From the NCBI GenBank assembly GCA_037379345.1, contig CM074524.1:34791644-34855643 (forward strand): a DNA stretch of 64,000 nucleotides, read 5' to 3'. The notes below the pieces were generated by a model. That model saw nothing but the letters and a program-made list of their open reading frames with translations, was not told the DNA's origin and ran no database searches. The position numbers and the translations under genes are program-made. Of the stretch, positions 6,726 through 58,211 are shown piece after piece. Numbering within the stretch: position 1 is the stretch's first letter; the number at the start of each line of letters is the position of its first letter. Origin of the DNA: Perna viridis (lineage: Eukaryota).

Positions 6726-8400
6726 TTTGCTTGTAACCTTTGCATGATTTACATTGTGTCATGTGTAATGGACTTTTAATTAATACAGATACTTTTATTT
6801 ACTTGTCTTTTGTTGTTATATAAGTTGTTATAAATAATAAGTTTATAAGTTTTCTGTAATAAATGATTCGCCACTCGACTTTTTTTGCTATGTGCATGTT
6901 ATTCAAATCAAGTAGGTAAACGGAAAGGCCAAATGGCAAAAGGCGAAGAGACATTATGACAACAGAAGATCAAGAAACAATCAAAAACTTAAAAGATACA
7001 ACCTGAAATATCAAAATGATAACAGGCGAAGGGAAACATATGCAATGAACACAAAAAAAGAAATAAAATCCAACTGTGTGAACGACAGTATCAACCGGAA
7101 AAGTGCAACATGCAAAGAGAAATTCAAAAGATCGTGTCCAATCATTAAATGGGAGAGAAGCTATGATAGTTAGCCATGCTGAAAACTGTTTACTCCACGG
7201 AGGATGCACAACCCGGCGTAGGCTGGTTAAATTTGGGCGGAATTACTGATTGAATTGTAACGATACATTGTAGCTTACAAATTTTCACAATATTTTGGAA
7301 TTCCATTAAGCACAAAGTTCTGCTTCAGTGCACTTTTATGGACCACTTGGTACCTCATTATCTAAAAAAAACAGTAAATAATGATAGAGAAAACTTGCTT
7401 AGCATTTTTCTTTAAAAAAGCTCTTGTATTTAGACAGAGATTTTTTTTTATAAAGAATCCTATATAAATATTTCAACATCGCACCAAAAATAAAAAAGTT
7501 TATTTTTCGTTTTGGCAAGGTCCATTTTGGCACCTGATAACTCGAAACTGTAAGAGATATCTTAAAAAATAACTGTAAATCACAGGCAGTGAATTTCACG
7601 AGGAAAATAAAATAATTCAAAATCAGACCAGAAATTAAAACAAACAGTTTTTTGGGCATGGGCCCATTTTTGCCCCCATAGACTGACGATGATAATTGCA
7701 ATTTAGAATCTGATTATCATTCTTAAAACAAAATTTTAGATGATACCAATAAAGGAAAGAATTGACAAAATTGAATGAAAGTAAACCTTCGACATTTATT
7801 TTAAATAAACACCTATGTTACCCTTTTCCCAAAGCCCTTTTTGCAGAACGGTATGGGCAAGTGACCCATTTTAAATGATAATTTTCCTCAAGCAACATGT
7901 AGCAATATATCAAAGTTTCAAATGACATTGAGTTCACTACAACTTCAGTTGCAGGAAACGAAAGAAACAATACCAACGACGACATCACAACATAATACGA
8001 CCGCTATTTTTCTGGTATGCAGATCGCCACATATCTCCGGCATGAATTCATTTCTTGTTTTTAATGTAGAGGGGAAAATTAAAATTATAAGTAGATTCGG
8101 CCAATTTTAAACAAGAGCAGCCATACTGTTAAGTTGGATACTTAAATGAATCTATGGACAGATGAGTCTTGTCTGTTGTTTTGTGTAAAACGCTGAGTAG
8201 TTTACAGTGTGATTTTATTCTAAATAATGACATTTTGAGCTTTATATGTTTCATATACATGTATAATTATGGGGACGGAATATTTTATAGAGTGCCCCTG
8301 GACCTGCTGTCTGTAAATAACAACTATAGTAAATATTTTCCTTTTTCTTATTATTTAAAAGTTTGTATCAATTAGAATTTTTATATCAAACAGAATAGTC

Positions 8401-8600
8401 CTAAATAGTTCTCACAGAGGCATTTATATTGTGTGCATTTTCTTGAAGCCGTTTCCATTGGTCAGGTGTAAGCCTTATGCCTCGTTCTGATTCTGAAAAT
8501 GTTTTCTCTTCCGAGAACTCCCTGATGTCAACAACAACTTCTTCTCCTATAGCGTAAACACCTATACGGCGTTTCCATGACAACGAAAATAAAATCCAGT
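8401..8600 (-). CDS. Exon 2 (terminal) of the predicted zf-PARP/PC4/PC4 protein: second PC4 domain
   Basis: Acceptor tattttttAG (AG at 8602-8601). Translation FSLSWKRRIGVYAIGEEVVVDIREF...ERGIRLTPDQWKRLQENAHNINASVRTI* aligns with the PC4/SUB1 ssDNA-binding domain (DIREY...KGISLNPEQW). The phase matches exon 1. AATAAA on the minus strand at 8219-8214. Confidence 0.8.
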
Positions 8601-8774
8601 CTAAAAAATAAATGTTCGAAATAAGGATTATTTTTTAAAATTGATTTTAACCAAGTTAGACACAGACCTTTTCCTTTCCAAAGGGTAGGACTGGGGGTTG
8701 GAACGCTTGTTCGGTGAAAGGAATCTTTCACAAAAGCGTTTTTTTTTTTTTTAAATAATCTACATGGTTAAGAA

Positions 8775-8960
8775 ATGGGGGAAATATTGAATCATATTTT
8801 TTTTGTCTAACGTATGGGTGACATAATGAATCATTTATTTTTTCGTCTAAAGAAAGGGTGGAATATTGAATCATATATTTTTTGTCTAAAGAAATAAAGA
8901 AAATATTGAATCATATATTGTTTTCGTTTAAAAAATATAGTGGAAATATTGAATCAAAAA
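8775..8960. repeat. About 41-bp degenerate tandem repeat (intronic)
   Basis: Recurrent aaatattgaatcatattttttttgtctaaagaa...gtgg, about 5 copies. Confidence 0.75.
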
Positions 8961-9324
8961 TTCTTTTGGCTGACTTGGTTTTCTAATTTTGAATTTTTTT
9001 TTCAAACAAATCCAAAGACTACTCTTCGCTTGGTTGGTGCCTTACGTGATATGGGTAACATAAACTTTGGAACAGTTTACTCTTAATGAATTTATGAGTT
9101 TGCAATTTATGCAAGTCATAGAACATAAATTATTATATAGATAGCAGTGTTTTATCGAATGTTCCCAGTGAAATAAATTTGGATAATTCACACTGTGAAA
9201 TAAATTCGGTAATTTCACTCTCGGACTTTCTCCCGCTAAAACGTCACAACTTTGAAATCAATCCGCCGTTCACAAAATTTGAAATTTATGTTGAAAATAG
9301 CATCGAATAGGAACTCTATATAAT

Positions 9325-9468
9325 AAATAGGATAATCAATTAGTTATCGTGAATAACAAAATATGATCACTCATGCCAAGAACACTTTAAAATCGTTAAA
9401 TCTATGCGTTCTTAGGCATTCGTGATAATATTTTGGTTATTCACTCCTTCAAATCAATTATCCTATTA
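9325..9468. mobile_element. Short hairpin-like MITE remnant
   Basis: Inverted arms aataggataat...gtgaataacaaaatatgatcac...atgcc versus ggcattcgtgataatattttggttattcac...attatcctatt. Confidence 0.55.
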
Positions 9469-10739
9469 ATATCCCTACGTTAGTTAGCCATATTTAACTT
9501 GGTCAGAAATTAAACAGTCCAAAAAACATTCGATTCTACTTTTAATCAAAATTTATTAATTCGATTTATCAAAACGGTATTGAGTTTGAAATTGTTTCTG
9601 ACTATAAACCAAAGACGTCACCAGCGGTGGATTTGAATGAGGCACGACAGTCGTGCAGCCTCCGTAAAATTGGCAAAGTATCGACTGAAACAGAAAAAAG
9701 AACGTGAAAGGTGTGGCACAATATTTACCCAGTAAAACATTACAACAATTACCGTATTCTCTTTAAGTAGGGCAGATAAATCTTCACTTGGGCTCTACTC
9801 TGCTATCTACCTATCTTCAAACTTCAAATCCGCCCACAGCTTTAAACACAAGAGAGCCAAATTTTCAGAAAACTTATCATTAGTTATCTGGGAGGGGCTA
9901 GTCAAAATGTTGGGAGGGGGTGGTGAAGTTTTATTTATTTATTATTCTGGAAATGGGGTTTCAATCCTTTTCTTCGATTAGAAGAAAAGGGTAAATTTCC
10001 ACATAGCATCAAATGGACATGTGGGGTCATTTGTTTTTGGTTTGAACATTACAACAATCAATTGTTAAGGTATTTTATACCTCTTTAAACAGAACACACG
10101 ATTGATAATTCACTGATGTACATCTATCCATGTTCATTCATTTGCATAAAAAGGGGGATAAAACAAATCAATTGTGGCGTTCGAAATTCATAAATAATGA
10201 TAAGCCCTTTGGTATAAACTATGTTGAATTATTTTGAATTCGTTGAAACTAGACATTCCCCCTAACGGGACTTACACCCCCGCAGCTTGTTAAACTATGT
10301 ACATTGGGCGTACGATTCATATTGGACACAATTTCAATGGTGGATAGACTATGCACTTTTTGACACAAAATTTGCCGTCATTTCTAAAAAAAAAAAATAC
10401 AAAAAAGCAATCAATACCATTTTTTGTTGACAGTACATTAACAGAATATGACTAATTTCTGACAATACGCCCATCTCCATATGATAATATGACACCCCAT
10501 AAAGTTTCATAACTATCATGCAAGATATTGAGGAGGAGTTGCGGACAACGCATCTGACCAGGTTTCGCTGAAAAATGCCTGGGTTCCAACAGCCTTCATT
10601 TCTAAAATTTTTCTGCAAACAAAAATTCCTGACAATATGCACATCTTTATATGGTAATCTAACACCCCATTAAGTTTCATAACAATCATGCTTTAAAGGA
10701 CAGATGTTCGGCACACAACAAGTGGTTGATGTCTATTCC

Positions 10740-10990
10740 GTCTTGTCTCTCCCTATCAATCTCTTCCACAGAGATATCGGTCATGTCTCTTCTACTGAGT
10801 TTTCATATCAGTCTCTCCCTCAATATCATTCTCTTCAAGAGGGTTTCATGTATCGGTCCTTTCTCTCCCTATCATTCTTTTAACAGAGTTATCAGTCCTT
10901 TCTCCCCATCACTCTTTTCAACAGAGTTATCCGTCCCTTCTCTAGCTATCATTCTCTTCAGCAGAGTAAATTATCGGTCCTATCTCTCCC
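10740..10990. repeat. Degenerate pyrimidine-rich tandem repeat (intronic)
   Basis: Recurrent tatcattctcttcaacagagttatcggtcctttctctccc-like units. Confidence 0.65.
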
Positions 10991-11143
10991 TTACAGTGTA
11001 AGAAAGAGATAAGACACGAAAACTCGGTGGAAAAGAATGTTGTGGATGGAGCACCAGTTTGCAATGCAAAGGACCGGGTTCCATTTTCAGTTTCAATGGT
11101 TTGTTTTACATATACGTCTTGGTCTACTATCATTACAACGTAC

Positions 11144-11789
11144 CTGGTGAGTCTGTCTCGGATTGTTTTATTTTATTTTTATCTTTCTGTCCACGCTTCT
11201 CTTGTTCTTTGTCTTTAATTGACTTTTGTGTAGTGGAAATAGCATCACAGACATCGTCGAAGTAGGATTCTAGCTTTAGCCATTGATCGCTAGACAGAGT
11301 AATGCCGGATTTCGTGGGTTTGGCAATCAAACCTCCTCTAGGAATGAAATATTTCCGAATGCTTACCAACACAGTGCTTTGTATTTTTATCGCAGCAACA
11401 CACAGCAGATTACCGAGATCGAAAGTGTTTGGGTCAAGTTCATAGTCTCCACCCGCCTCTGATCCTTCAAAGATTGCTTCCGGTTTTACCTTACGGCCTT
11501 CTGCTGTTGTCGCTGTTGAATCAACGACGAGTTTATTTCTATCACTTAGTCCTAATTCGTTTAAACCGTCGACTAGCTCTGACAAAATGTTCCCATTTAT
11601 TCCCCGTAAATGGTTTCTATAGTAACACTTAGTCCAGAAACAAGTGTAGTGGAACCAAGACGTCGTTTTGTACTCCTGAACACCTAGCCGAAGGCTGTCT
11701 GAATTGACAAGAGATTTGCAGCCACAACAACGCACTATGTTTTTGTCTGGTTTAGAGGAAATTACAAACGGCAAAGCATTCTTCTTCAT
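11144..11789 (-). CDS. Exon 1 of the predicted 281-aa protein: PARP-type zinc finger plus first PC4 domain
   Basis: ATG in AAAATG context. C21-x2-C24...LRLG...WFH47-x2-C50 and DGLNELGLSDRNKL match the PARP1/ligase III zinc-finger pattern. FDLG...VLVSIRKYF...KPTKSGITLSSDQWLKL matches PC4. Donor CCAG|GTACGT at 11144/11143, phase 1. Confidence 0.85.
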
Positions 11790-12179
11790 TTTTACTATGA
11801 CATTCCAATGCCGTTAGGTTAGAACGTAAACAAACAAGGGTTATCGTTCTTTGTTGATTGTCGGTTTTGACATTTAAATATTCGCGTAATATTCATTGGC
11901 AATTTTTCAGTAGATATATTTTGAAATATATATTCACATGAGGAACGATATATATACAAGTTCATAAACTCGTTAATCCCCCTTCCGCATTGTGGTCGTA
12001 CAAGTAGTCTTTGTTTTATCTTTGTTTTAACACGTACAAAGTTTGGCAAAAGCGAAAAACAAAAACTAAGCAATATTGTACACATTCATTTTTAAGTCCA
12101 AACCACAGTTGAAGCAATAAAAGGAAATAAAGCCTTAATCAATATGCATGGACAGAGGAAAATATGAGACCGAAGCAAT

Positions 12180-12472
12180 GATTGGAGTAGTAGAGAATTG
12201 GCTGTAGTTGTACGGCCTTTTAACACGTTACTGAATAGAATCTAAAGACAATCGAACAAACTCTGCATAATATTTAGTCCGTGCACTAGCTGACAGAAGC
12301 CATGTAAATCCACCTATTCCCTGGAAACATTATTCTGACTAGTCGTCACTATTTTCTGTTTGTCGCGTCATTGGTGGAGGAGCAGTGTTAACATGGAAGG
12401 TCTAGATCCGGATCGATTTCACGACCTCCCGCACTCAAGGTAAGCAAGCCACGAATGTACAGCCATACGACC
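12180..12472 (-). mobile_element. Degenerate tRNA-derived SINE
   Basis: Minus-strand head ...cttgagtgcgggaggtcgtgaaatcgatcc resembles a decayed tRNA-like SINE head. Boundaries are approximate. Confidence 0.35.
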
Positions 12473-14581: not shown

Positions 14582-14755
14582 CTACAAGTCACCACCGAGC
14601 CGATCGATTTCTTCCACCAAAAACTCTACGTCACTTTTCAAGACGGCCATATTTGAAAAAATCATTCTGAAAAAGTTCACAAGGTCACCATCTGGCTGAT
14701 ATCCAATCAAAAGAGTTCCTTTTTCAACCATTTTCCGTTTGATTTCTGGAGCTAC
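14582..14755 (-). CDS. CSAD: CSAD/GADL1-like exon 11 (terminal)
   Basis: [21 protein letters not shown]...NFFRM...[10 protein letters not shown]; acceptor tttcAG. Confidence 0.93.
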   Translation of the reverse strand, partial: VAPEIKRKMVEKGTLLIGYQPDGDLVNFFRMIFSNMAVLKSDVEFLVEEIDRLGGDL

Positions 14756-17700
14756 CTGAAACAATTTTACTTTTCGTTATTTGTTGTTGAGTTTTACATC
14801 AACAAAGAAATACTTACAAAGGAGAATGGATATAGTAAACATGTTACAGAGAAAACAACCCCACCGTGATGAAAAATGTCTACTCAAGGTCAACCAAAGG
14901 ACGATGAGGAAACACCACTGGACAGGCTGCAGCTGGCTTCAAAACAACATTATTTACATGCTGCAGCAACATATAAGTAAACTGAACGTGAAAAAGATAA
15001 ATAGATGCCAGAAATTAAATCCTGACCTGGGACAAGCGCAAAAAATGTGGCGGTGTTGAAGTACTTTGTTTGGCGTGGTCACAACCCTCTCCCTTTAAAA
15101 TTGGTCACTGTAGAAAATATTATATTATAAAAATATATAATTAATCATACCTTCAAATCAACTGAAAAAGGTGGGAGTCCCTATTTAATATATAAATAAA
15201 GAAACTGATTGTACCTTTACACAAATGCACCAAGGACTACAAGCAGTTAGCTAGCAGTTAACTGATATGCAAGCTCTCCAGACCAGTTTAAACCTACAAA
15301 AAGCTATGTTCTCATATTTGGGCTTAGTCAATCGTGATATGGTGTTAATGATAAAATTTGAAGTTAGATTTCGAACTTTATACCTTATACATTGATGATA
15401 ATTCACATTTCCTTTTAGAGTTAGCAGTAAACATAATAATGTACTCTCTCTTAACATAGACCAAACAAACTTTAATAACGTTACGGTTTATGAAGTTACC
15501 TTTCCCAGCTGTTCCCACCACTCTTTAGTTTCCGGTTGACCTCTGAACTTTTTGGGTATGTACCAGAAACACACATTTGTACACTGAGGCTACAAATGAT
15601 CGAAAACATTAGTATACACTTAATGTGATTTCGTCTGTTTTTTCATAAAGTTGTGTGACCAGTTTCATGAAAATAATGTCAAGTCATTATGACGCCATAT
15701 ATTAACATGTTTGCTGTGGAAACATATTTTCCAATACTCGTTGAGTTTTGTATGCAGGCTTACTGTAAATGAATGTTTGCTAAACCAAAATTCGAATGGC
15801 TTACCCATGAACGTATATAACATTTCCTCTAAAAACCCAGTGTAAAAGTTACGATTTTTGCCAATTTTGTTAAAAACAATTTTAAGGTTTATAATACTTT
15901 TTACAACAATTGAAATTGGTTATAATTTCTTAATACATTACAGGTACGGATACGGGCTACATAGCATATATCAGCTGTACGGAAGATCCCAAAAACAGGT
16001 ATATTCGACACTTTTTATTGTGTAGCGGCGGTAGCGTAAAGGCCTTGAATATCGTCCGTAAACAAATGATCACAGTATACCTCTTGTACAAGCCTAAATC
16101 CCTCTGTCGTCTTCACAAGTTTTGCCAGATATCTATATTAAATAAAAAGGATGTCATCACATTTACGACAAAACTTGTTATTTAAATTCTAAACATTTTA
16201 ACTTGAATTAAACGAGGTAGTAAGTAACAAGCGAATCTTAATCTACCAAACCTTTGCAAATTATTGTACATTCGTTTGTTCTCTATTTGTTTATTCCAAA
16301 AAGCAACGGCACACGGAAAGGGTTATTATTTATCATACACGTATATAAAACTCTCAACATATTTTAATAAAAGGGAAACATGTTTCGCCTTTTGAATAAC
16401 TATTTTACAAAATAGTTGAACAACTTTGGGTGATATGTGGTTCTATGTATGTTACAGCTGTGTATGTTTCTTTTGCCTCTTTGATTCCCCATTGAACGTG
16501 ACATGAAACCTAAATTAGCCAATATCACACTATACAGAGCTGTATTATCTATTTTCGGTCTATATATACATTGTTAAGGTAACCACCTTTGGCCTTCCAG
16601 GGTGCCTTTGGTCTGAACATACTACATACATGTATATAAAGAACGACAAACCTAGAGCATTCAAACAAGTGATCTACACCAGCGGCCATACCAGCGTCAC
16701 CTTTGGACTTCCACATCGTCCAGATTTTCAAAGCATCTACTTTCCTGCCACACTGTACGGACTTATCTCCAGTGTCGTACGTGACGTCATAAAACTTATC
16801 TTGTTGGAATAGGTACTTAGCCTTGGCAGAATGGGCGTCTAAGAGCAAAGTCTGAAATACAGAAACTCAATGAAAGCTTTTAGGGATGATTGGGCATCTA
16901 ACAACAAACAATAGAAACGCCATCATAAATATGAAAGGTCAGACTGTATAATCTGGTTTTGTTTGTTTATTTTTATGTCAAGCGTTGCAATACCTTGGTC
17001 CTTCGCAAGTTGGTATTATTCAAACTGTCATTGTTTTACAACAATCATATTTCCAAGTTTTATTACTATTTTTTACATTGTTTTGATTTCATGCACAATA
17101 TGAGTATATTTAAAGAACGACTGTAGCACACTTTCTTCTGTCGAATGTATACTTTCGGCGTGAATTCAGTCGAGTTCCGCTATGAATTCATAACATTCAT
17201 CGGGGTGTCTTTTTGTTTTATTATCTTGAGATGTGTTTTTGTAGTGACTTCCGAAGAACCTGAGTCGCTCTCTGTTTTCAGTCAACGAGTTTCGTGACGT
17301 TCGTTTTTCCGAGTGAACTATTCATCTGTTGTCCTTTATATGTTATTGTGTCCCGCCACGATCCTTCAGTATCACTACTACTTCATTATTAAAAGATCAT
17401 TCAGTTAATGCTATATGTCAAACCAAGAAAATGTATACGTCTAAGAGTACCGAGTGAATCGAAATCGCTCAATAAGTTACAAGATTACAAGAAATAAAAG
17501 CTCAACAACTTCTAGAGCACAAACTACGTCGTTTGGCAACTAAATTATCAATTCTATATTCTGTTATTTCTGTAATGAGCAAATCATTTAAAACTAAAAT
17601 TTTAACAGAAAAAAAATCCTTAAAATTTGCATTTCATTTTGCCTCTACTTATACAACAACTAATCATTTCTATTAAATTGAAGTTTTATTTTACAGCTCG

Positions 17701-38886: not shown

Positions 38887-39702
38887 ATGATAAATCAATT
38901 GACAAATGAAAATGAGGTACAACAAGGGTATCCTTTGCAACCGAATTTGCAAGTTGTATTACAAGATATTCAATTGAAATTAAATAAACTTGATCTGCTC
39001 GATAGCGTGTGTGAAAGGTTGTCGGTTATAGAGCGTAAATTTGATGCTGTTGACAAAGATATACACCAGTTAAAACAGGCGGTACAGGATCAAGATAGAA
39101 AATTAAATGTTAACGAAACCGATATGGCACAGTTTCATAATAGAATATCAGAATTAGAGTTTTCCCGTAGGGAGTTAGAATCACACACGAACGATCTTCA
39201 TGAAACACTGTTGGATCAACAAACGAGATCTATGAAATATAATTTAATGTTTGAAAATATTAATGAAACATTTAATCAAGATCCAAATGTGAACGAAGAT
39301 ACGGAGGCGGTATTGCAATACTTTCTAGTCCATGAGCTGAAATTGGATGGCAACATAGACTTCCAAAATGTACATCGGCTCAAAAGAAATAATGATCGTA
39401 GCAAAACACGAGGAATAGTTGCTAGGTTCGTTCATTTTAGGGACAAAGAATCGGTTATAAAAGCAGCACAAGAAAATCTAAGGGGGAAACCGCAAAAAGT
39501 TTACTCACAGTATCCACCGGAAATCAGCAATCGACGTAAGGAACTTGTACCGATAATGAAAGAATTTAGAGATCAAGGGAAACGCGCATCTATAGTCGTG
39601 GACAAACTGTATGTAGATGGACAACGCTTTGTGCCAGGCCAGCAAACAGCCGGGGGCCGAGACAGAAATTTGCCAGGAAATCAGCATGTCAGATTCAAGT
39701 AG
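38887..39702 (+). CDS. LINE ORF1p (coiled coil, L1-like RRM, CTD), 5'-truncated
   Basis: Heptad coiled coil, then RSMKYNLMFENI...VHRL...RGIVARF...SQYPPEISNRRKEL...DKLYVDG. Confidence 0.85.
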   Translation: MINQLTNENEVQQGYPLQPNLQVVLQDIQLKLNKLDLLDSVCERLSVIERKFDAVDKDIHQLKQAVQDQDRKLNVNETDMAQFHNRISELEFSRRELESHTNDLHETLLDQQTRSMKYNLMFENINETFNQDPNVNEDTEAVLQYFLVHELKLDGNIDFQNVHRLKRNNDRSKTRGIVARFVHFRDKESVIKAAQENLRGKPQKVYSQYPPEISNRRKELVPIMKEFRDQGKRASIVVDKLYVDGQRFVPGQQTAGGRDRNLPGNQHVRFK

Positions 39703-42700
39703 GACAGGCGGGATAGAGAGAGAAACCCTAATATAAACAACAATTTCTGTAACTTACATAAATTAAAAATAGGTTGTCTGAATGTATGTGGACTTAAGTC
39801 AAAGTTTTTGAACCCAGATTTTTTATTATTTATAAAAGATTATGATATTCTCATGTTTCAAGAAACTATAACTGATATGTATGACAATTTAGAACTACCT
39901 AATGGATATTCATTTAAAGCAAAACATAGAAAAAAATGTACAAAAAAATCAGGTGGTCTTATTATTGTTTATAAAACCTTATTTAAAGAAGTAATTGAAT
40001 TTATAGATTCAGAGTCAGACTTTGTATTATGGATGAGAATGAAAAGTGAAAGGTTAAAATATGATTTATTATTAGGGTGTATTTATATTCCACCAGAAAA
40101 CACAAAGTATGCATCAGATGAAGCTTTTACTGAGATAGAATCTGAAATGTTTGATTTTTATAAAACGGGTGAAAAAATATGTCTTTTAGGTGATTTTAAT
40201 GCCAAAACAAGTAATTTACCAGATTTTGTTCAACCAGATAGTTCTTTATTGGATACTTTTGATTTGTTTGATGATCCAGATCTTATAACTTTTATGTATG
40301 ACTATGAAAACTTATTACGGGCTAGTCTTCCTCTAGAAAGGAAAAGTACTTGTACAGGCAAGCCAAATACATATGGTCACAAACTTTTAGATATGTGTAG
40401 AAAAAATAATGTCTATATAATAAATGGTAGAGTAGGTAATGATCGGTTCAAAGGTGAGCGTACTTGTAAAGATTTAACTATAGTTGATTATTGTCTATGT
40501 TCATCCAATTTACTGTTTTATATATCTGCATTTGAGATAGGAGAGTTTTCCCCCATGTTCTCGGACGTACATAAGCTGATTTCTTTAACTTTAGATATTA
40601 TCAGAAATATAGAAACGGAAAGTTATGACGATGATAAGCGAAATGATCATGGAGAAAAGGCGAAACGTTGGGATAACGAAAAGCATGATGATTTCATCGA
40701 TCGTATCCTTGAAGATGAAGAGTTCACTGAATTAAATTTTATGGTCGATGAGCTTTGTAATCTAGAGGATGTGAGTAGTGAAATTAACATGGAGAATATT
40801 AACGAGATAGTCGATGGCATACATAATCTTTTTAACCGAACAGCTAAGGCCACTTTCGGTACTATTAAACAAAAGTCGTCGGTCGGCAAGAGTACGACGA
40901 AACTTCGTCCGTGGTTTGACGAAACTTGTAAAGTGAAGAGGCACGAGTTTAATATAGCGAGAAAGCAATATAATAAATCGAAAACTGAAGTAAATCGATT
41001 AATATTAGCGGACACGAGTAAAGAATACAAGCTCGCTATGAACAGGAGTTTTCAAAAATTTCAAAATAATATAACTGCTGAAATTCGAACATCCCCGAAG
41101 TCAAATCCCAAAAAGTTTTGGAAACTGCTGAATCGTTTTTCTGAAAATAAGAGCAGTTCGATTGAAGTCTCCTTGGAAGATTTATTTGATTATTTTAAAG
41201 AAATGAACGAGTTTGATGACGAGGACACGGTTCCGAATGTCGATATAGATATAGATAATGAAGTTAACTTTGAGAGCAATGAGATTCTTAATTCTCCTAT
41301 ATCCCGTGCAGAAATAGAAAATGTTATATTGAATCTTCATAATGAAAAGGCAAGTGGCCTGGATTGTGTAACTAACGAATACATAAAACACTCATTACAT
41401 GTTATGATTCCTATATATGAAAAATTGTTCAATTTTATTTTTGATACGGGAATTGTCCCGGATAGTTGGTCAGTAGGAATTATTACCCCTGTATTTAGAA
41501 ATAAAGGGAGTCAGAAAGAACCCAAAAATTATAGAGGGATTACTTTGATGAGCTGTCTAGGGAAGGTATTCACTGGTATTTTGAATAATAGGTTATGTCT
41601 GTTTTCAGACGAAGTTAATCTTATATCACAGTCACAAGCAGGGTTTCGAAAATTTCACTCGACAGTTGATAATATTTTTATTTTACATTCACTTATTAGC
41701 TTATATCTCTCAAAGAATAAAAAAATCTTTTGTACATTTGTAGATTTTAGCCGAGCATTTGATACTGTCTGGAGAGCCGGCTTATGGCAGAAATTACACA
41801 AAAATAATATAAGCGGAAAATGTTATAATGTAATTTACAACCTCTATCAGAATGTAAAATCTTGTGTAACTAAAAATGGAATTAACTCGGATTTTTTTGC
41901 TTGTAATATTGGGGTTCGTCAGGGAGAAAATTTATCTCCCTTCCTTTTCTCACTTTTCATAAATGATATAGAGAAGTATTTAGAAAATAATGATGTGGTA
42001 TCACTAGGTTTAATTGACGATTTAAGTAATGATATGTTAGAATTTTATTTAAGAATCTTTCTACTTCTTTATGCTGACGATACAGTACTTATCTCAGAAA
42101 GTGCTGAAGGTATGCAAAAAATGCTTGATACTTTTAGAGATTATTGTAAGGAATGGAAGTTAAATGTTAATGTGGAGAAGACAAAGGTGGTCATATTTTC
42201 TAAAAAGAAGATCGCTCAAAATGTAAAATTTATGTTCAATGATAATAAGCTTGATGCATGTGATTCCTATAATTATTTAGGCATCTTGTTCCATTATAAT
42301 AGTAATCTTGATAATACTAAGAAAAAGCTTGTTCAACAAGCACAAAAAGCGTTGTATTCTGTATATTATAAGATACGAAACATTAATATACCCATAGATT
42401 TACAACTTAAAATATTTGACACTTTAGTCCGACCCATTTTTCTCTATGGTTGTGAGGTAATCGGGTATGAAAAGAATGATACTATAGAAAAGGTGCATTT
42501 GCAATTTTTAAAGAAAATTCTTAAAGTTCAAGCAACAACCTCTAGCCATCTAGTTTACGGTGAACTTGGTCGGTTTCCATTGATTGTTGATATTAAATGT
42601 CGAATACTGTGCTTTTGGAACTCTTTAGTTGGCTCTAATAAGTTATCTGCAAAATTTGCTCTTTTACTATATAACCTGAACAAGAATGGTTTATTAGATA

Positions 42701-43404
42701 CAAAGTGAATCAAATTTGTTAAATCAACTTTTAATGAAGTTGGTCTGACTTTCATTTTCTCAGATTATCTACATGTAAGCTCTTTATGGCTGAAGACTCA
42801 TGCCAAACAGATATTAAAAGACCAATTCGTTCAAAAGTGGTATGCTGAACTTACTAATACATCGAGAGGGCAATTTTATCTTAAGTTTAAAAATGAGTTC
42901 GTGTTGGAACCATATTTACTTCGCCTAAACCCTACTCAAAGATTATATATTACAAAACTTCGATTATCAAACACTAAATTCCCCGTAGAGACAGGACGAT
43001 GGAGGAATGTCCAAAGAGACAATCGAATATGCACTAAATGTAATTCCGGAGAGGTTGGCAGTGAATTTCATTATCTATTTATTTGCCAGTACCCTGATAT
43101 ACTTGAAAAACGGTTGAAGCACATTCCTCGATATTATATCAACAATCCCAGTGAAACCAAAATGATTGGTTTATTAAAATATTGTCATAACAAATTTCTT
43201 ATTAATTTAACATCTTTTGTTAAACAAATATGTCCATTATTTTAAAACTGTCAACTCACTATCCCCCATGTTTTTGAATTCATTAATTGTAATTCTATGT
43301 ATATTATATTGTCTTTATATATTTGATTAGTATTGTATATCATGCTTATGTTGCACTGTAATGTGCCTGAGTTTCAACATAAAATCTTGAATCTTGAATC
43401 TTGA
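38890..43404 (+). mobile_element. Young, 5'-truncated RTE-X/CR1-group LINE nested in the L1 element
   Basis: Open ORF1 and almost open ORF2, 3' tail (ATCTTGA)n at 43384-43404. The host L1 frame EYYDK|TSDAARIR is restored when the insert is removed. Confidence 0.92.
39703..43245 (+). CDS. LINE ORF2p (APE endonuclease, RT, C-terminal zinc finger) with one internal TGA at 42706-42708
   Basis: LKIGCLNVCGL, FQET, LGDFNA, SDVH; FVDFSRAFD, GVRQGENLSP, YADD; PVETGRW...CTKC...EFHYLFIC. ORFs 39808..42708 and 42901..43245 are in the same frame. Confidence 0.92.
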
Positions 43405-56305: not shown

Positions 56306-56702
56306 GTTTGTTTGTTTGTTGGGGTTTAACGTCCGAGCAGCAATATTTCAGCTATATTCAGACAATGAACATGAAATGGAAAAAGGATGGGACACAAGGA
56401 TAATAGGTCGACAAATTTTGATTGCCACTGGAAAAAGGGGGAATGGGTAAGGTCGGGCAATTTAGCCTCCTGTGGCGGAGCGCAAAGGTTCCTACTCCTA
56501 TCGAATACCGCAGCAGGATTCTTTAACGTAAAAGGAACGTGGCATCTTTCCAAACACGGTGCACCACTATGGTTTGCGGTCAGGTTTTCCGTATTATAGC
56601 CTGACAACCCCAGCATGTAACACGCCAGGGGTACCCCATTCCACCACCTGGGGCACACATCCCAGTTGCTTTGTTGGCAGAGCGCCTAGCCCCCGGCTAG
56701 GT
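56306..56702 (-). mobile_element. Structured-head SINE, 5'-truncated, 14-bp TSD
   Basis: TSD ttcgagaaaattat at 56292-56305 and 56703-56716. Confidence 0.92.
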
Positions 56703-58211
56703 TTCGAGAAAATTATCCTACAGCGATTACAAACGCACATTTTAACTCTCGATTTGTTTCCAAACCCCTTCCAGCAGGGATTTCAGAGAGGCTTTAGCTG
56801 CCTCACAGCCTCATTTATTGTACATGAAACTATTTATCATAATCTTGAATTGAATAGTAATGTATATGCTGCATTTCTCGATAGTCGAAAAGCTTTTAAC
56901 ACAGTATGGCGTAAAGCTTTAATGTATAAATTGTATAACTTAAAGGTGAAAGGTAAAGCATGGTGTATAATAAATGACTTATATAGTAATACTGAAAGTG
57001 CAACAGCTTTAAATCAGTGTAAATCTAGATATTTTAAAATGTCTGAAGGGGTGAGACAAGGGAAAGTATTACCTGGTTTACAATATATATATTGTTTTCA
57101 TTAATGACCTCCTCGTCGACCTTGAAAAATGTAATAACAAAATGGATATTAACAACTTAACCTGTTGAGCACCTTGTCTTGCTGATGATATTGCATGTCT
57201 TGCCACATCGCCTCCAAAGTTACAACAGATGTTAGATGTTTGTTCAAATTATGCAAATAAATGGCGTTTTGAATTTAATGGACTGAAATCTTGTATTATG
57301 TGTTTTTTCAAAAAGAGCAATGCGACCTAGTTACGGTTGGACAATTTGTCATCAAGATATACCAGTTACTGAAAACTATAAACACCTTGGAACAGAGTTA
57401 AATTGTAACTTCAGATCTTATGACAGAACCCAAAACGTATGCAGAAAAGGTCGAAATACATATTTTGCAGTTGCTAATATACGAATGGAAAATATCAACC
57501 CTACATCTATAATTAAACTATAAAACTTGTTTTGCCAACTTGTCTTTACGGCTGTGAAATATAGTCGAATCTTCGTAATCAAGACATTAATTTGTTTAAC
57601 AGATTTCAACATATGCGTAAAGACTACCGACTCGTATCAGGTCTGACATGTGTGAGAGCATGGTAGGACTCCTTCCAATATTCTGCGAATTGAAAAACGT
57701 AAACTTTCATTCTTCGGGAAACTGTGTTCGTTAGATTGTAACATTCTACCCTAAAAAGTTTTCCTCTATCGATTATATAACGTGCCTCACTAACATTAAT
57801 CTACACATGAGATTTATACCTGATCTTGTTGACATACTACAGAAATACAGACTATTTAATGCTGTGACACACTACTTGAGCTCGGGACAATTTCCCAACA
57901 AATCTGTGTGGAACAAAACAGTGAAAACAGCCATCAACTCTATACAACACGATGATTGGACTACACGTTTGACCATAGACTCCGAATTCTCTAGATTCTA
58001 TAAACTTCATGACTCGATATCTGTGGCAAACATTTGGAAATATCCAAAAAGTGCAATTGAACTTCGTAGAGCCTTTTCCATAGCCAAATTATGGACTTCG
58101 ATTTTAGAAACCGAAATGAAGTTATGTGCTGTAGACATTATGATTCATGCAACATGTGACTGCTCAATTACAAAACATTTAAACGATACATTATTTGATT
58201 TAATCATCGAA

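What the first reader, a model, noticed from the sequence alone, without database searches (positions are those of the whole stretch)
8401..11789. Hidden two-exon gene encoding a PARP-type zinc finger fused to tandem PC4 domains (candidate single-chain DNA-break/ssDNA sensor)
Seen: the ORF track shows two separate ORFs 2.5 kb apart. A donor (CCAG|GTACGT, 11144) and an acceptor (tttttAG|AC, 8600) join them in frame (646+200=846 nt, junction codon GAC). The product is 281 aa: zf-PARP (C21,C24,H47,C50), PC4, a charged linker, and a second PC4. Established: PARP1/ligase III zinc fingers recognise DNA strand breaks. PC4/SUB1 binds ssDNA as an obligate homodimer and normally has one PC4 domain behind an unstructured N terminus. 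Inference: two PC4 domains in one chain could fold as an intramolecular pseudo-dimer tethered to a nick sensor. That would make a non-catalytic reader of nicked, gapped or melted DNA, possibly in repair, transposon or virus sensing, or transcription. I do not recognise this architecture from any characterised protein. Both exons are free of stops although decayed repeats surround them.
Basis: partly seen in the sequence, partly recalled or inferred. Interest (0 to 1): 0.88.

Follow-up and report, generated by a model that had tools for sequence, protein, structure and literature searches.

The report
Mussel zinc-finger plus double-PC4 gene
This is a real, expressed two-exon bivalve gene for a small protein with a PARP-type zinc finger and two PC4 DNA-binding repeats, but its scallop counterpart was already published as a heat-tolerance candidate ("AiPC4"), so it is a new member of a known, biochemically unstudied family.

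Summary
The two minus-strand ORFs (11789-11144 and 8600-8401) are joined by a GT..AG intron of 2543 nt. In four runs from four studies, one contig each carries exactly this junction. The product is 281 aa. It has a zf-PARP-like finger (C21, C24, H47, C50), a PC4 repeat, a Lys-rich linker and a second PC4 repeat.

The gene is single-copy in this genome and under purifying selection. Mussel, oyster and scallop orthologues all have one phase-1 intron at the same site.

The architecture is not unrecorded. The bay-scallop orthologue Arg0230340.1 / WBW30868.1 was described with zf-PARP plus two PC4 domains (PMC9223095). It is also the top thermal-tolerance GWAS gene, "AiPC4" (PMC8328476).

An AlphaFold2 model of the Mytilus orthologue places the two PC4 repeats as an intramolecular, PURA-like "type I" PC4 domain, and the finger overlays PARP1 Zn1.

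The nick-sensor idea remains untested and is weakened. Mussels lack the PARP1 base-stacking loop, and the main ssDNA-stacking residues of PC4 are replaced.

Verdict: a real gene and a new member of a known kind, of moderate-to-low interest.

Seen in passing: an expanded CARD plus double-PC4 family.

The parts
11790..11825 (-). 5' untranslated region; transcript contigs begin at 11824-11825 in three runs
   Evidence: table 8 (records 1, 8, 16)
11144..11789 (-). Coding exon 1 (646 nt): residues 1-215 plus the first base of codon 216
11520..11768 (-). PARP-type zinc finger, residues about 8-90. Ligands are C21, C24, H47, C50; R34 is conserved. The family signature is CFW-x2-C-x-Y.
   Evidence: Pfam 30.2 bits. 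Alignment to PARP1 Zn1. Family profile versus PARP1 Zn1 gives E about 1e-12 for Zn1-only chains, down to 3e-24 for the F1F2 chain. Orthologue model Z 12.5.
11232..11456 (-). PC4 repeat a, residues about 112-186
   Evidence: Pfam 26.9 bits. Human PC4 E 1.5e-6.
11145..11231 (-). Lys-rich charged linker, residues 187-215 (9 K+R, 6 D+E)
   Evidence: Helical then disordered in the orthologue model.
8601..11143 (-). Phase-1 intron, 2543 nt, GT..AG. It lies at the same position as in Mytilus (410 nt), Saccostrea (651 nt) and Argopecten (526 nt).
9130..9470 (.). Interspersed repeat inside the intron, about 340 bp. It has thousands of genomic copies and very deep RNA contigs. It is not part of the gene product.
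8401..8600 (-). Coding exon 2 (200 nt including TAG at 8403-8401): PC4 repeat b, the best conserved part
   Evidence: Pfam 41.6 bits..
8361..8400 (-). 3' untranslated region, at least 40 nt, as far as the spliced contigs reach
   Evidence: record 22
11872..11880 (-). TATTTAAAT, a possible TATA box, with CCAAT at 11895-11899. This is inference only.
   Evidence: sequence read

Best explanation
SHOWN: a real, expressed, single-copy, two-exon gene on the minus strand. It encodes a 281-aa protein with a PARP-type zinc finger, PC4 repeat a, a Lys-rich linker and PC4 repeat b. It is the orthologue, in this mytilid-like bivalve, of a gene conserved in mussels, oysters and scallops. The scallop member is the published 'AiPC4' (Arg0230340.1). 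PREDICTED, from an AlphaFold2 model of the natural Mytilus orthologue: the finger has the PARP1 Zn1 fold. The two PC4 repeats pack on each other as one intramolecular 'type I' PC4-like domain (four strands and a helix, a linker, then four strands and a helix), as in PURA repeats I-II. INFERRED: a non-catalytic reader of nucleic-acid structure. The finger would give a duplex or backbone contact; the Arg34 grip is kept but the base-stacking loop is lost in mussels. The asymmetric double-PC4 domain would hold unpaired strand on at most one good face. Repeat a keeps R86 and an aromatic residue at the W89 position. Repeat b keeps the basic KRR of strand 1 and R86, but has Ser at the W89 position. 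The likely role is in transcription or genome maintenance under stress, because expression of the scallop orthologue tracks thermal tolerance. My odds are about 0.95 for the gene and architecture, about 0.75 for the intramolecular PC4 pairing, about 0.5 for DNA-structure binding as the main activity, and about 0.2 for specific nick or break sensing.
For: Spliced contigs in four runs from four studies. Pfam hits on each exon. Single copy in the genome. Full-length orthologues with the same junction: Mytilus (287 aa), Magallana, Saccostrea, Argopecten, Mizuhopecten and Pecten. The same phase-1 intron site in three other genera. dN/dS is about 0.12 for exon 1 and 0.04 for exon 2, with dS saturated. 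The domains are more conserved than the linkers. Repeat-a and repeat-b sequences each form a clade (100/99) that follows taxonomy. The family profile hits PARP1 Zn1, LIG3 ZnF and PC4. The model has pLDDT 81.3 and pTM 0.77. Overlays: PARP1 Zn1 Z 12.5 with rmsd 1.6 A over 82 residues; PC4 Z 8.0 with rmsd 0.9 A over 64; PURA I-II Z 9.0 with rmsd 3.8 A over 131, covering residues 123-285. Among the fetched PC4 proteins, chains with 2 or 4 repeats (102 and 34) far outnumber those with 3 (8). Type I PC4-like domains are an established class (PMC7549692). Scallop data: the top GWAS SNP for thermal tolerance, and expression correlated with Arrhenius break temperature at r 0.675-0.962 (PMC8328476). The scallop gene is also up-regulated after heat in mantle and haemocytes (PMC9223095).
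Against: There is no binding, localisation or knock-down data for any member. The finger is below Pfam's cut-off in this species (30.2 against 39.3 bits). It lacks the six residues matching PARP1 V39-F44. PC4 F77 is Ile in both repeats. W89 is Phe in repeat a and Ser or a gap in repeat b. K78 and K80 are Q and T in repeat a, and G and E in repeat b. The net charge is -2 for repeat a and 0 for repeat b. The fold evidence is a prediction for a 58%-identical orthologue, not for the window protein. I did not see the PAE or the coordinates. The scallop association is correlative. No heat-shock element stands out upstream.
Confidence: 0.6

Rival explanations
1. One reading: a dedicated sensor of nicks or strand breaks. 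The finger would recognise the break as PARP1 Zn1 or the LIG3 finger does, and the PC4 pseudo-dimer would hold the frayed strands.
For: The finger of the orthologue model has the PARP1 Zn1 fold (Z 12.5). R34 of the phosphate grip aligns. Pairing of the PC4 repeats is predicted. The scallop authors invoke DNA-damage repair under heat and oxidative stress.
Against: The base-stacking loop (PARP1 V39-F44, with M43 and F44) is deleted in this protein and in Mytilus. The loop is variable in length and sequence in oysters, scallops and the gastropod relative. The PC4 stacking residues are not kept. There are no experimental data.
Confidence: 0.2
2. An RNA-binding or mixed RNA/DNA-binding protein, like PURA, whose type I PC4-like domain binds ssRNA in the cytoplasm. 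The finger would be an accessory.
For: The best single-chain structural match for the double-PC4 module is PURA repeats I-II. PC4-like domains bind RNA as well as DNA (PMC7549692).
Against: The sequence kinship is to PC4/SUB1 (PF02229), not to PUR repeats; identity to PURA is about 9%. zf-PARP fingers are known from DNA-binding proteins. The Lys-rich linker looks like a nuclear signal, though this is inference.
Confidence: 0.1
3. A protein-interaction adaptor or regulator whose nucleic-acid surfaces have decayed. It might, for example, modulate canonical PC4, PARP1 or the transcription machinery.
For: Several DNA-contact residues are lost in both PC4 repeats, and the finger loop is lost. Both repeats have neutral or acidic net charge.
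Against: Strong purifying selection acts on exactly the strand 1 basic motif (SWKRR), R86 and the (R/K)G of repeat b. The zinc ligands and R34 are invariant.
Confidence: 0.08
4. Not one gene: two unrelated ORFs, a decaying pseudogene, or an assembly or processing artefact.
For: The ORFs lie 2.5 kb apart among repeats. The run type (RNA) is only a guess in the run table.
Against: An identical GT..AG junction appears in four studies at 5-20 times the intron depth. There is no intron-less genomic copy. Intron position and phase are conserved in three other genera. dN/dS is far below 1.
Confidence: 0.02

Closest known systems
Bay scallop AiPC4 = Arg0230340.1 (GenBank WBW30868.1; XP_069107135.1), Argopecten irradians
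   Same: The architecture is the same: zf-PARP, a low-complexity linker and two PC4 domains (PMC9223095). It has two coding exons with a phase-1 intron just before repeat b. It is 292 aa against 281 aa. It aligns end to end with the Mytilus orthologue at 39% identity. Each domain falls in the same clade.
   Different: Identity to the window domains is only 37-46%. The scallop finger keeps a near full-length loop, where mussels have a six-residue deletion. The scallop gene has an extra 5' UTR exon. Its genomic neighbours differ. Its link to thermal tolerance is correlative and has not been examined in this species.
Human PC4 / yeast SUB1 (PF02229; PDB 1pcf, 2c62)
   Same: Both repeats pass the Pfam cut-off. 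Repeat b of the orthologue model overlays the PC4 C-terminal domain at rmsd 0.9 A over 64 residues with 36% identity. R86 is kept in both repeats.
   Different: PC4 has one repeat and forms a homodimer (type II). Here two diverged repeats sit in one chain (type I); BLASTP finds no alignment between them. PC4's Ser/acidic and Lys-rich N-terminus is replaced by a zinc finger. F77, K78, K80 and W89 are not conserved.
PARP1 zinc finger 1 and the DNA ligase III zinc finger (PF00645)
   Same: The ligand pattern is C-x2-C...H-x2-C. R34 and the W-x-H-x2-C-F-W motif align with PARP1 Zn1. The family profile gives E about 1e-12 to PARP1 Zn1 and 4.6e-12 to the LIG3 ZnF. The fold overlay gives Z 12.5 and rmsd 1.6 A.
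   Different: There is a single finger, with no catalytic, BRCT or WGR parts. The base-stacking loop is deleted in mussels. An eight-residue insertion follows CFW, with an invariant Cys and Tyr. The window sequence scores below Pfam's gathering cut-off.
PURA repeats I-II, Whirly, MRP1/2: type I PC4-like domains (PMC7549692)
   Same: The topology is a single chain of four strands and a helix, a linker, then four strands and a helix, with the two halves paired. The model overlays PURA I-II across both repeats (Z 9.0).
   Different: There is no detectable sequence kinship (7-10% identity). Here the halves are bona fide PC4-family repeats. The resemblance is in how it works, not in family membership.
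Other bivalve PC4 fusions: CARD plus two PC4 repeats (this genome and oysters), and BIR plus PC4 'G3' IAPs (PMC7831173)
   Same: The PC4 module is reused behind a different N-terminal domain. The CARD form is also predicted to fold as a type I domain (PURA Z 12.5).
   Different: Those families are multi-copy and carry death-fold or BIR signalling domains. This gene is single-copy and carries a DNA-type zinc finger. The domain tree does not resolve a common origin of the tandem.

Membership tests
zf-PARP (PF00645) | Zinc ligands C-x2-C ... H-x2-C | tested here: met
   C21, C24, H47 and C50 align to PARP1 C21, C24, H53 and C56. They are invariant in the family alignment.
zf-PARP (PF00645) | Score at or above Pfam's gathering cut-off (39.3 bits) | tested here: not met
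   The window exon 1 scores 30.2 bits and Mytilus 29.8 bits. Distant members with the same CFW-x2-C-x-Y signature pass, at 47.6-56.2 bits. The family profile hits PARP1 Zn1 at E about 1e-12.
zf-PARP (PF00645) | PARP1 Zn1/Zn2-type fold | tested here: met
   The orthologue model overlays 3od8_H with Z 12.5 and rmsd 1.6 A over 82 residues. This is a prediction for Mytilus, not for the window protein.
zf-PARP as a DNA-break sensor (PARP1 Zn1, LIG3) | Base-stacking loop with a hydrophobic tip (PARP1 M43/F44). That this loop matters is established knowledge of PARP1, recalled from memory and not tested here. | tested here: not met
   A six-residue gap lies opposite PARP1 V39-F44. The loop varies in length among orthologues.
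zf-PARP as a DNA-break sensor (PARP1 Zn1, LIG3) | Binding to nicks or breaks | not testable with these tools
   Needs EMSA or damage-recruitment assays.
PC4/SUB1 (PF02229) | Score at or above Pfam's gathering cut-off (25 bits) | tested here: met
   Repeat a scores 26.9 bits and repeat b 41.6 bits.
PC4/SUB1 (PF02229) | Fold of four strands and a helix | tested here: met
   DSSP of the orthologue model shows strands 126-170 then helix 171-205, and strands 223-264 then helix 266-286. The overlay on 1pcf gives rmsd 0.9 A over 64 residues.
PC4/SUB1 (PF02229) | ssDNA-stacking residues F77 and W89 and the basic K78/K80 loop | tested here: not met
   F77 is Ile in both repeats. W89 is Phe in repeat a and Ser or a gap in repeat b. 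K78 and K80 are Q and T in repeat a, and G and E in repeat b. R86 is kept in both.
PC4/SUB1 (PF02229) | One repeat per chain, forming a homodimer, behind a Ser/acidic and Lys-rich N-terminus (canonical coactivator layout) | tested here: not met
   There are two repeats in one chain behind a zinc finger. The canonical single-repeat PC4 gene lies elsewhere in the genome, on C3 (L005).
Type I PC4-like domain (PMC7549692) | Two four-strand-plus-helix halves of one chain paired with each other | tested here: met
   Model residues 123-285 overlay human PURA I-II (Z 9.0, rmsd 3.8 A over 131 residues) and Drosophila Pur-alpha (Z 8.7). pTM is 0.77. This is a prediction only.
Bivalve zf-PARP + 2xPC4 orthologous group (scallop AiPC4 / Arg0230340.1) | Same domain order over the full length | tested here: met
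Bivalve zf-PARP + 2xPC4 orthologous group (scallop AiPC4 / Arg0230340.1) | Shared gene structure: one coding intron, phase 1, just before repeat b | tested here: met
   Mytilus, Saccostrea and Argopecten; the window.
Bivalve zf-PARP + 2xPC4 orthologous group (scallop AiPC4 / Arg0230340.1) | Single best counterpart in this genome, with gene trees following taxonomy | tested here: met
   Only one locus matches exon 1 strongly. The repeat-a and repeat-b clades each have 100/99 support and separate mussel, scallop and oyster groups.
Bivalve zf-PARP + 2xPC4 orthologous group (scallop AiPC4 / Arg0230340.1) | Conserved neighbourhood | tested here: inconclusive
   A pyridoxal-dependent decarboxylase (CSAD-like) is the neighbour both in the window (exons at 14585-14764 and 15494-15613, minus strand) and in Mytilus, but the relative orientation differs. 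It is not seen within 10 kb in Saccostrea or Argopecten.

The most novel reading that the evidence does not exclude
The protein is a single-chain reader of damaged or melted DNA, specific to molluscs. A PARP-type finger would be tethered to an asymmetric intramolecular PC4 domain, and the protein would protect the genome or transcription during heat and oxidative stress. It would be one of several bivalve inventions that reuse a double-PC4 module as a nucleic-acid-sensing head; the others would be CARD plus two PC4 repeats, and BIR plus PC4. That would give the scallop thermal-tolerance GWAS hit a mechanism.
Probability: 0.3. Interest if true: 0.55.

Novelty: new member of a known kind. Interest (0 to 1): 0.33.

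Why it matters
The gene is the mussel-lineage counterpart of the top thermal-tolerance GWAS candidate in farmed bay scallops. That candidate has been discussed in print as if it were ordinary PC4. The scallop papers record the extra finger and the second repeat, but not what they imply. This work shows three further things: the family is conserved across mussels, oysters and scallops; the two PC4 repeats are predicted to form one intramolecular domain; and several canonical DNA-contact residues are missing. That reshapes which experiments make sense, namely structure-specific DNA or RNA binding rather than assumed coactivator function. It does not open a long-standing question, and the architecture is already in the databases.

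Tried and rejected
- Complex prediction with PC4 repeat a (exon 1, residues 108-192) and repeat b (exon 2) as two chains did not complete and was finally declared unavailable. Nothing was folded, so there is no verdict.
It worked later.
- The protein Atlas gave no usable hit and holds no model.
- Rfam found nothing in 8000-12400.
- A heat-shock-element scan gave 29 matches against 26 expected, with none near the promoter.
- BLASTP of repeat a against repeat b gave no alignment. The two repeats are old and diverged.
- dN/dS by YN00 failed, and dS by NG86 is saturated above 2. The ratios are therefore only rough upper-side indications.
- A paper search for the oyster locus tag LOC105331461 found nothing. 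A search for CgPC4 also found nothing new.
- I looked for PC4-like exons within 10 kb downstream of the paralogous finger exon on C9 and found none.
- The domain tree cannot say whether the tandem here and the tandem in the CARD family share an origin, because those forks are unresolved.
- Rejected readings: two independent ORFs, a pseudogene, a retrocopy artefact, and a transposon or viral gene (single copy, conserved intron, cellular orthologues).
Each exon was searched by reference, and the natural full-length Mytilus protein P0003 stood in for the fold.
Full report
WHAT IS THERE

On the minus strand an ORF opens with ATG at 11789 and runs to 11133. A second open stretch ends with TAG at 8403-8401. 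The donor is CCAG|GTACGT, with GT at 11143-11142. The acceptor is tttttAG|AC, with AG at 8602-8601. Together they join 646 nt to 200 nt in frame, through a split Asp codon. This gives 281 residues.

I searched each exon on its own by reference. I never submitted the joined product to a tool. Pfam results:
- Exon 1: zf-PARP at residues 20-87 (30.2 bits, E 7.9e-7, below the 39.3 cut-off) and PC4 at 139-174 (26.9 bits, cut-off 25).
- Exon 2: a full-length PC4 (41.6 bits).

Against solved structures, PC4 repeat a in exon 1 and repeat b in exon 2 match the human PC4 C-terminal domain (E 1.5e-6 and 1.7e-5). The finger matches PARP1 Zn1 (E about 1e-3).

IS IT SPLICED AND EXPRESSED?

I laid four runs from four different studies on 8001-12400. 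Each holds one contig of 820-878 nt that skips exactly 8601-11143. The skipped part ends CT..AC on the plus strand, which is GT..AG on the gene's strand.

The contigs reach from about 8361 to 11824/11825. They carry no further joint and no extra upstream sequence. Their depth is 22-55, against roughly 1-5 for most intron pieces outside the repeats.

The run table only guesses that these libraries are RNA. However, a six-frame search of the whole 723-Mb assembly finds exon 1 at one place only. No intron-less DNA copy exists that could explain the joined contigs. I take the splice as shown.

Only one coding difference was seen: 11432 G>T in one run. By my own reading of the codon this is P120T, at a site that varies among orthologues.

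RELATIVES AND CONSTRAINT

The closest named protein is Mytilus galloprovincialis LOC143054351 (287 aa). It has the same junction context...FP-D-WILFSLSWKRR.... Further full-length members are annotated in:
- M. edulis, M. trossulus and M. coruscus
- Magallana gigas (LOC105331461)
- Saccostrea cucullata
- Argopecten irradians
- Mizuhopecten yessoensis
- Pecten maximus

More distant finger-bearing relatives with degenerate PC4 halves occur in Ylistrum and in the gastropod Littorina saxatilis.

The annotated genes of Mytilus, Saccostrea and Argopecten each have exactly one coding intron. It is phase 1 and lies one or two residues before the (I/V)(L/V)FSL(S/A)W start of repeat b. Their introns are 410, 651 and 526 nt, against 2543 nt here.

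Against Mytilus, dN is 0.34 for exon 1 and 0.14 for exon 2, while dS is saturated above 2. The ratios of about 0.12 and 0.04 are rough, but they are clearly far below 1.

Identity to orthologues is highest in repeat b (82% to Mytilus, 46-54% to oysters and scallops). It is lowest in the two linkers. In a tree of single PC4 repeats, all repeat-a sequences form one clade and all repeat-b sequences another. Each clade has 100/99 support and separates mussels, scallops and oysters. The tandem therefore predates the split of these groups.

A pyridoxal-dependent decarboxylase (CSAD-like) is a neighbour both here (exons at 14585-14764 and 15494-15613) and in Mytilus, though the relative orientation differs. 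Oysters and scallops have other neighbours within 10 kb.

THE ARCHITECTURE IS ALREADY ON RECORD

A full-text search for PC4 together with zf-PARP returns one paper, PMC9223095 (Genes 2022). It lists five bay-scallop PC4 genes. By SMART analysis it states that Arg0230340.1 (292 aa) has a zf-PARP domain, a low-complexity region and two PC4 domains.

The GenBank entry WBW30868.1, 'PC4 [Argopecten irradians irradians]', sits in the same 90% cluster as P0006. P0006 is the scallop protein that aligns end to end with the Mytilus orthologue.

An earlier paper by the same group, PMC8328476 (Front Genet 2021), reports a GWAS of thermal tolerance:
- The most significant SNP lies in 'AiPC4' on chromosome 15, a gene with two coding sequences.
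- Two further associated SNPs lie in CDS 1.
- Expression correlates with the Arrhenius break temperature (r 0.675-0.962).

The paper's qRT-PCR primers translate to EDEEDGQ and VDIRDFS. I translated them by hand. Both strings are present in P0006, at the end of the linker and in repeat b. AiPC4 is therefore this orthologue.

The same literature already notes the expansion of PC4 genes in bivalves, for example 18 in M. galloprovincialis. None of these papers tests binding or discusses what the finger or the second repeat implies.

STRUCTURE

I therefore folded the natural Mytilus protein with a 34-row alignment. The model has mean pLDDT 81.3 and pTM 0.77. Two linkers are disordered (99-116 and 207-218). 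There are two units of four strands and a helix, at 126-205 and 223-286.

Structural alignment gives:
- Finger 5-95 on PARP1 Zn1 bound to DNA: Z 12.5, rmsd 1.6 A over 82 residues.
- Repeat b on human PC4: Z 8.0, rmsd 0.9 A over 64 residues.
- Residues 123-285 as one body on human PURA repeats I-II (Z 9.0, rmsd 3.8 A over 131 residues) and on Drosophila Pur-alpha (Z 8.7).

PURA I-II is the textbook 'type I' PC4-like domain. In that class two halves of one chain pair with swapped helices, in contrast to the 'type II' homodimer of PC4 itself (PMC7549692).

Two further observations agree with this. A CARD plus double-PC4 paralogue of this genome is also predicted to form a PURA-like body (Z 12.5).

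HOW FAR DOES 'BREAK AND ssDNA SENSOR' GO?

The finger. The zinc ligands, R34 and the W-x-H-x2-C-F-W core align with PARP1 Zn1. The alignment has a six-residue gap exactly opposite PARP1 V39-F44. From established PARP1 structural work, which I recall from memory and did not test here, M43 and F44 form the loop that stacks on the exposed base at a break.

Scallops and oysters keep a longer loop, but its sequence is not conserved. The family instead has its own invariant feature: an eight-residue insertion after CFW that carries a Cys and a Tyr.

The PC4 repeats:
- Human F77 is Ile in both repeats.
- W89 is Phe in repeat a and Ser in repeat b.
- The K78/K80 loop is neutral in repeat a and acidic in repeat b.
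- R86 is kept in both repeats.
- Repeat b keeps a basic SWKRR strand 1 and an (R/K)G that matches K101-G102.

I read this as an asymmetric domain with at most one good strand-binding face. The review says this is typical of type I domains. Nucleic-acid binding remains the most economical function for a zf-PARP plus PC4 protein. Specific nick sensing is not supported by the sequence, and nothing has been measured.

VERDICT

The gene and its domains are real, and the intramolecular PC4 pairing is predicted. The sensing mechanism is unproven and partly contradicted. The claim of an unrecognised architecture fails, because a published scallop orthologue and many database models exist. I class this as a new member of a known kind, with interest about 0.33.

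SEEN ON THE WAY

This genome gives at least 34 PC4 matches. Several belong to single-exon ORFs with a CARD followed by two PC4 repeats.

For the one I followed, the CARD passes Pfam's cut-off. In the model it overlays the Apaf-1 CARD at Z 16.4.

That ORF has 65 relatives at E <= 1e-5, in mussels and oysters. Many carry the RIG-I/MAVS-type CARD_2 hit, and every named relative is called 'uncharacterized', 'unnamed' or an automatic PC4-domain label. I found no paper on this fusion. BIR plus PC4 IAPs are reported in clams and mussels (PMC7831173).

This CARD plus double-PC4 family may deserve its own look more than the present gene does.

Noticed in passing
G000:C13:19096321-19097202 (L013 1195-2076, + strand). 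Relatives at L010, L011, L012, L014 and L015.: A single-exon ORF of 293 aa has a CARD (Pfam 27.5 bits, cut-off 23.9) followed by two PC4 repeats and a C-terminal C-x-E-C-x-P-F motif. In the AlphaFold2 model the CARD overlays the Apaf-1 CARD (Z 16.4) and residues 95-238 overlay PURA I-II (Z 12.5). It has 65 relatives in mussels and oysters, many with a CARD_2 (RIG-I/MAVS-type) hit, and none has a characterised function. No paper on this fusion was found. It is a candidate nucleic-acid sensor with a death-fold signalling domain.
   Followed up: partly
G000:C2:7351432-7352364 (L003 1144-2076, + strand): A 310-aa single-exon ORF made of three tandem zf-PARP fingers and nothing else. Each finger scores 52.8-68.5 bits. 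P0010, from a Logan contig, is almost identical to it.
   Followed up: no
G000:C9:25143301-25143687 (L002 1462-1848, + strand): A 128-aa exon encodes a zf-PARP finger (47.6 bits) with the same CF(W/F)-x2-C-x-(Y/F) signature as the gene studied here. It resembles the diverged subfamily found in Ylistrum, Littorina and P0046. No PC4-like exon was found within 10 kb downstream.
   Followed up: partly
window 9130-9470 (inside the intron): An interspersed repeat of about 340 bp with an internal inverted part. The first look found 4174 genomic candidates at 82-94% identity. Contig depth in the RNA-type runs is 700-2700, so copies are abundantly transcribed somewhere. There is no Rfam match.
   Followed up: partly
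window 14585-14764 and 15494-15613, minus strand: Exons of a pyridoxal-dependent decarboxylase (CSAD/GAD-like), 72-80% identical to the Mytilus neighbour gene. The gene lies upstream of the PC4 gene in the same orientation. In Mytilus the two genes converge.
   Followed up: partly
window 38887-42708, + strand; also 56559-57104: A LINE-like element. It has a 271-aa ORF followed by a 966-aa ORF with an endonuclease/exonuclease/phosphatase domain and a reverse transcriptase (RVT_1, 128 bits). A second reverse-transcriptase fragment lies at 56559-57104.
   Followed up: no
L004 (Mytilus galloprovincialis OZ263156.1) and the cluster of P0003: M. galloprovincialis and M. edulis each list two 287-aa loci of this gene on the same chromosome-scale record, 96% identical (LOC143054351 and LOC143054347; XP_071143484 and XP_071143485). 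This is either a recent tandem duplicate or haplotype redundancy. This genome has one copy.
   Followed up: no
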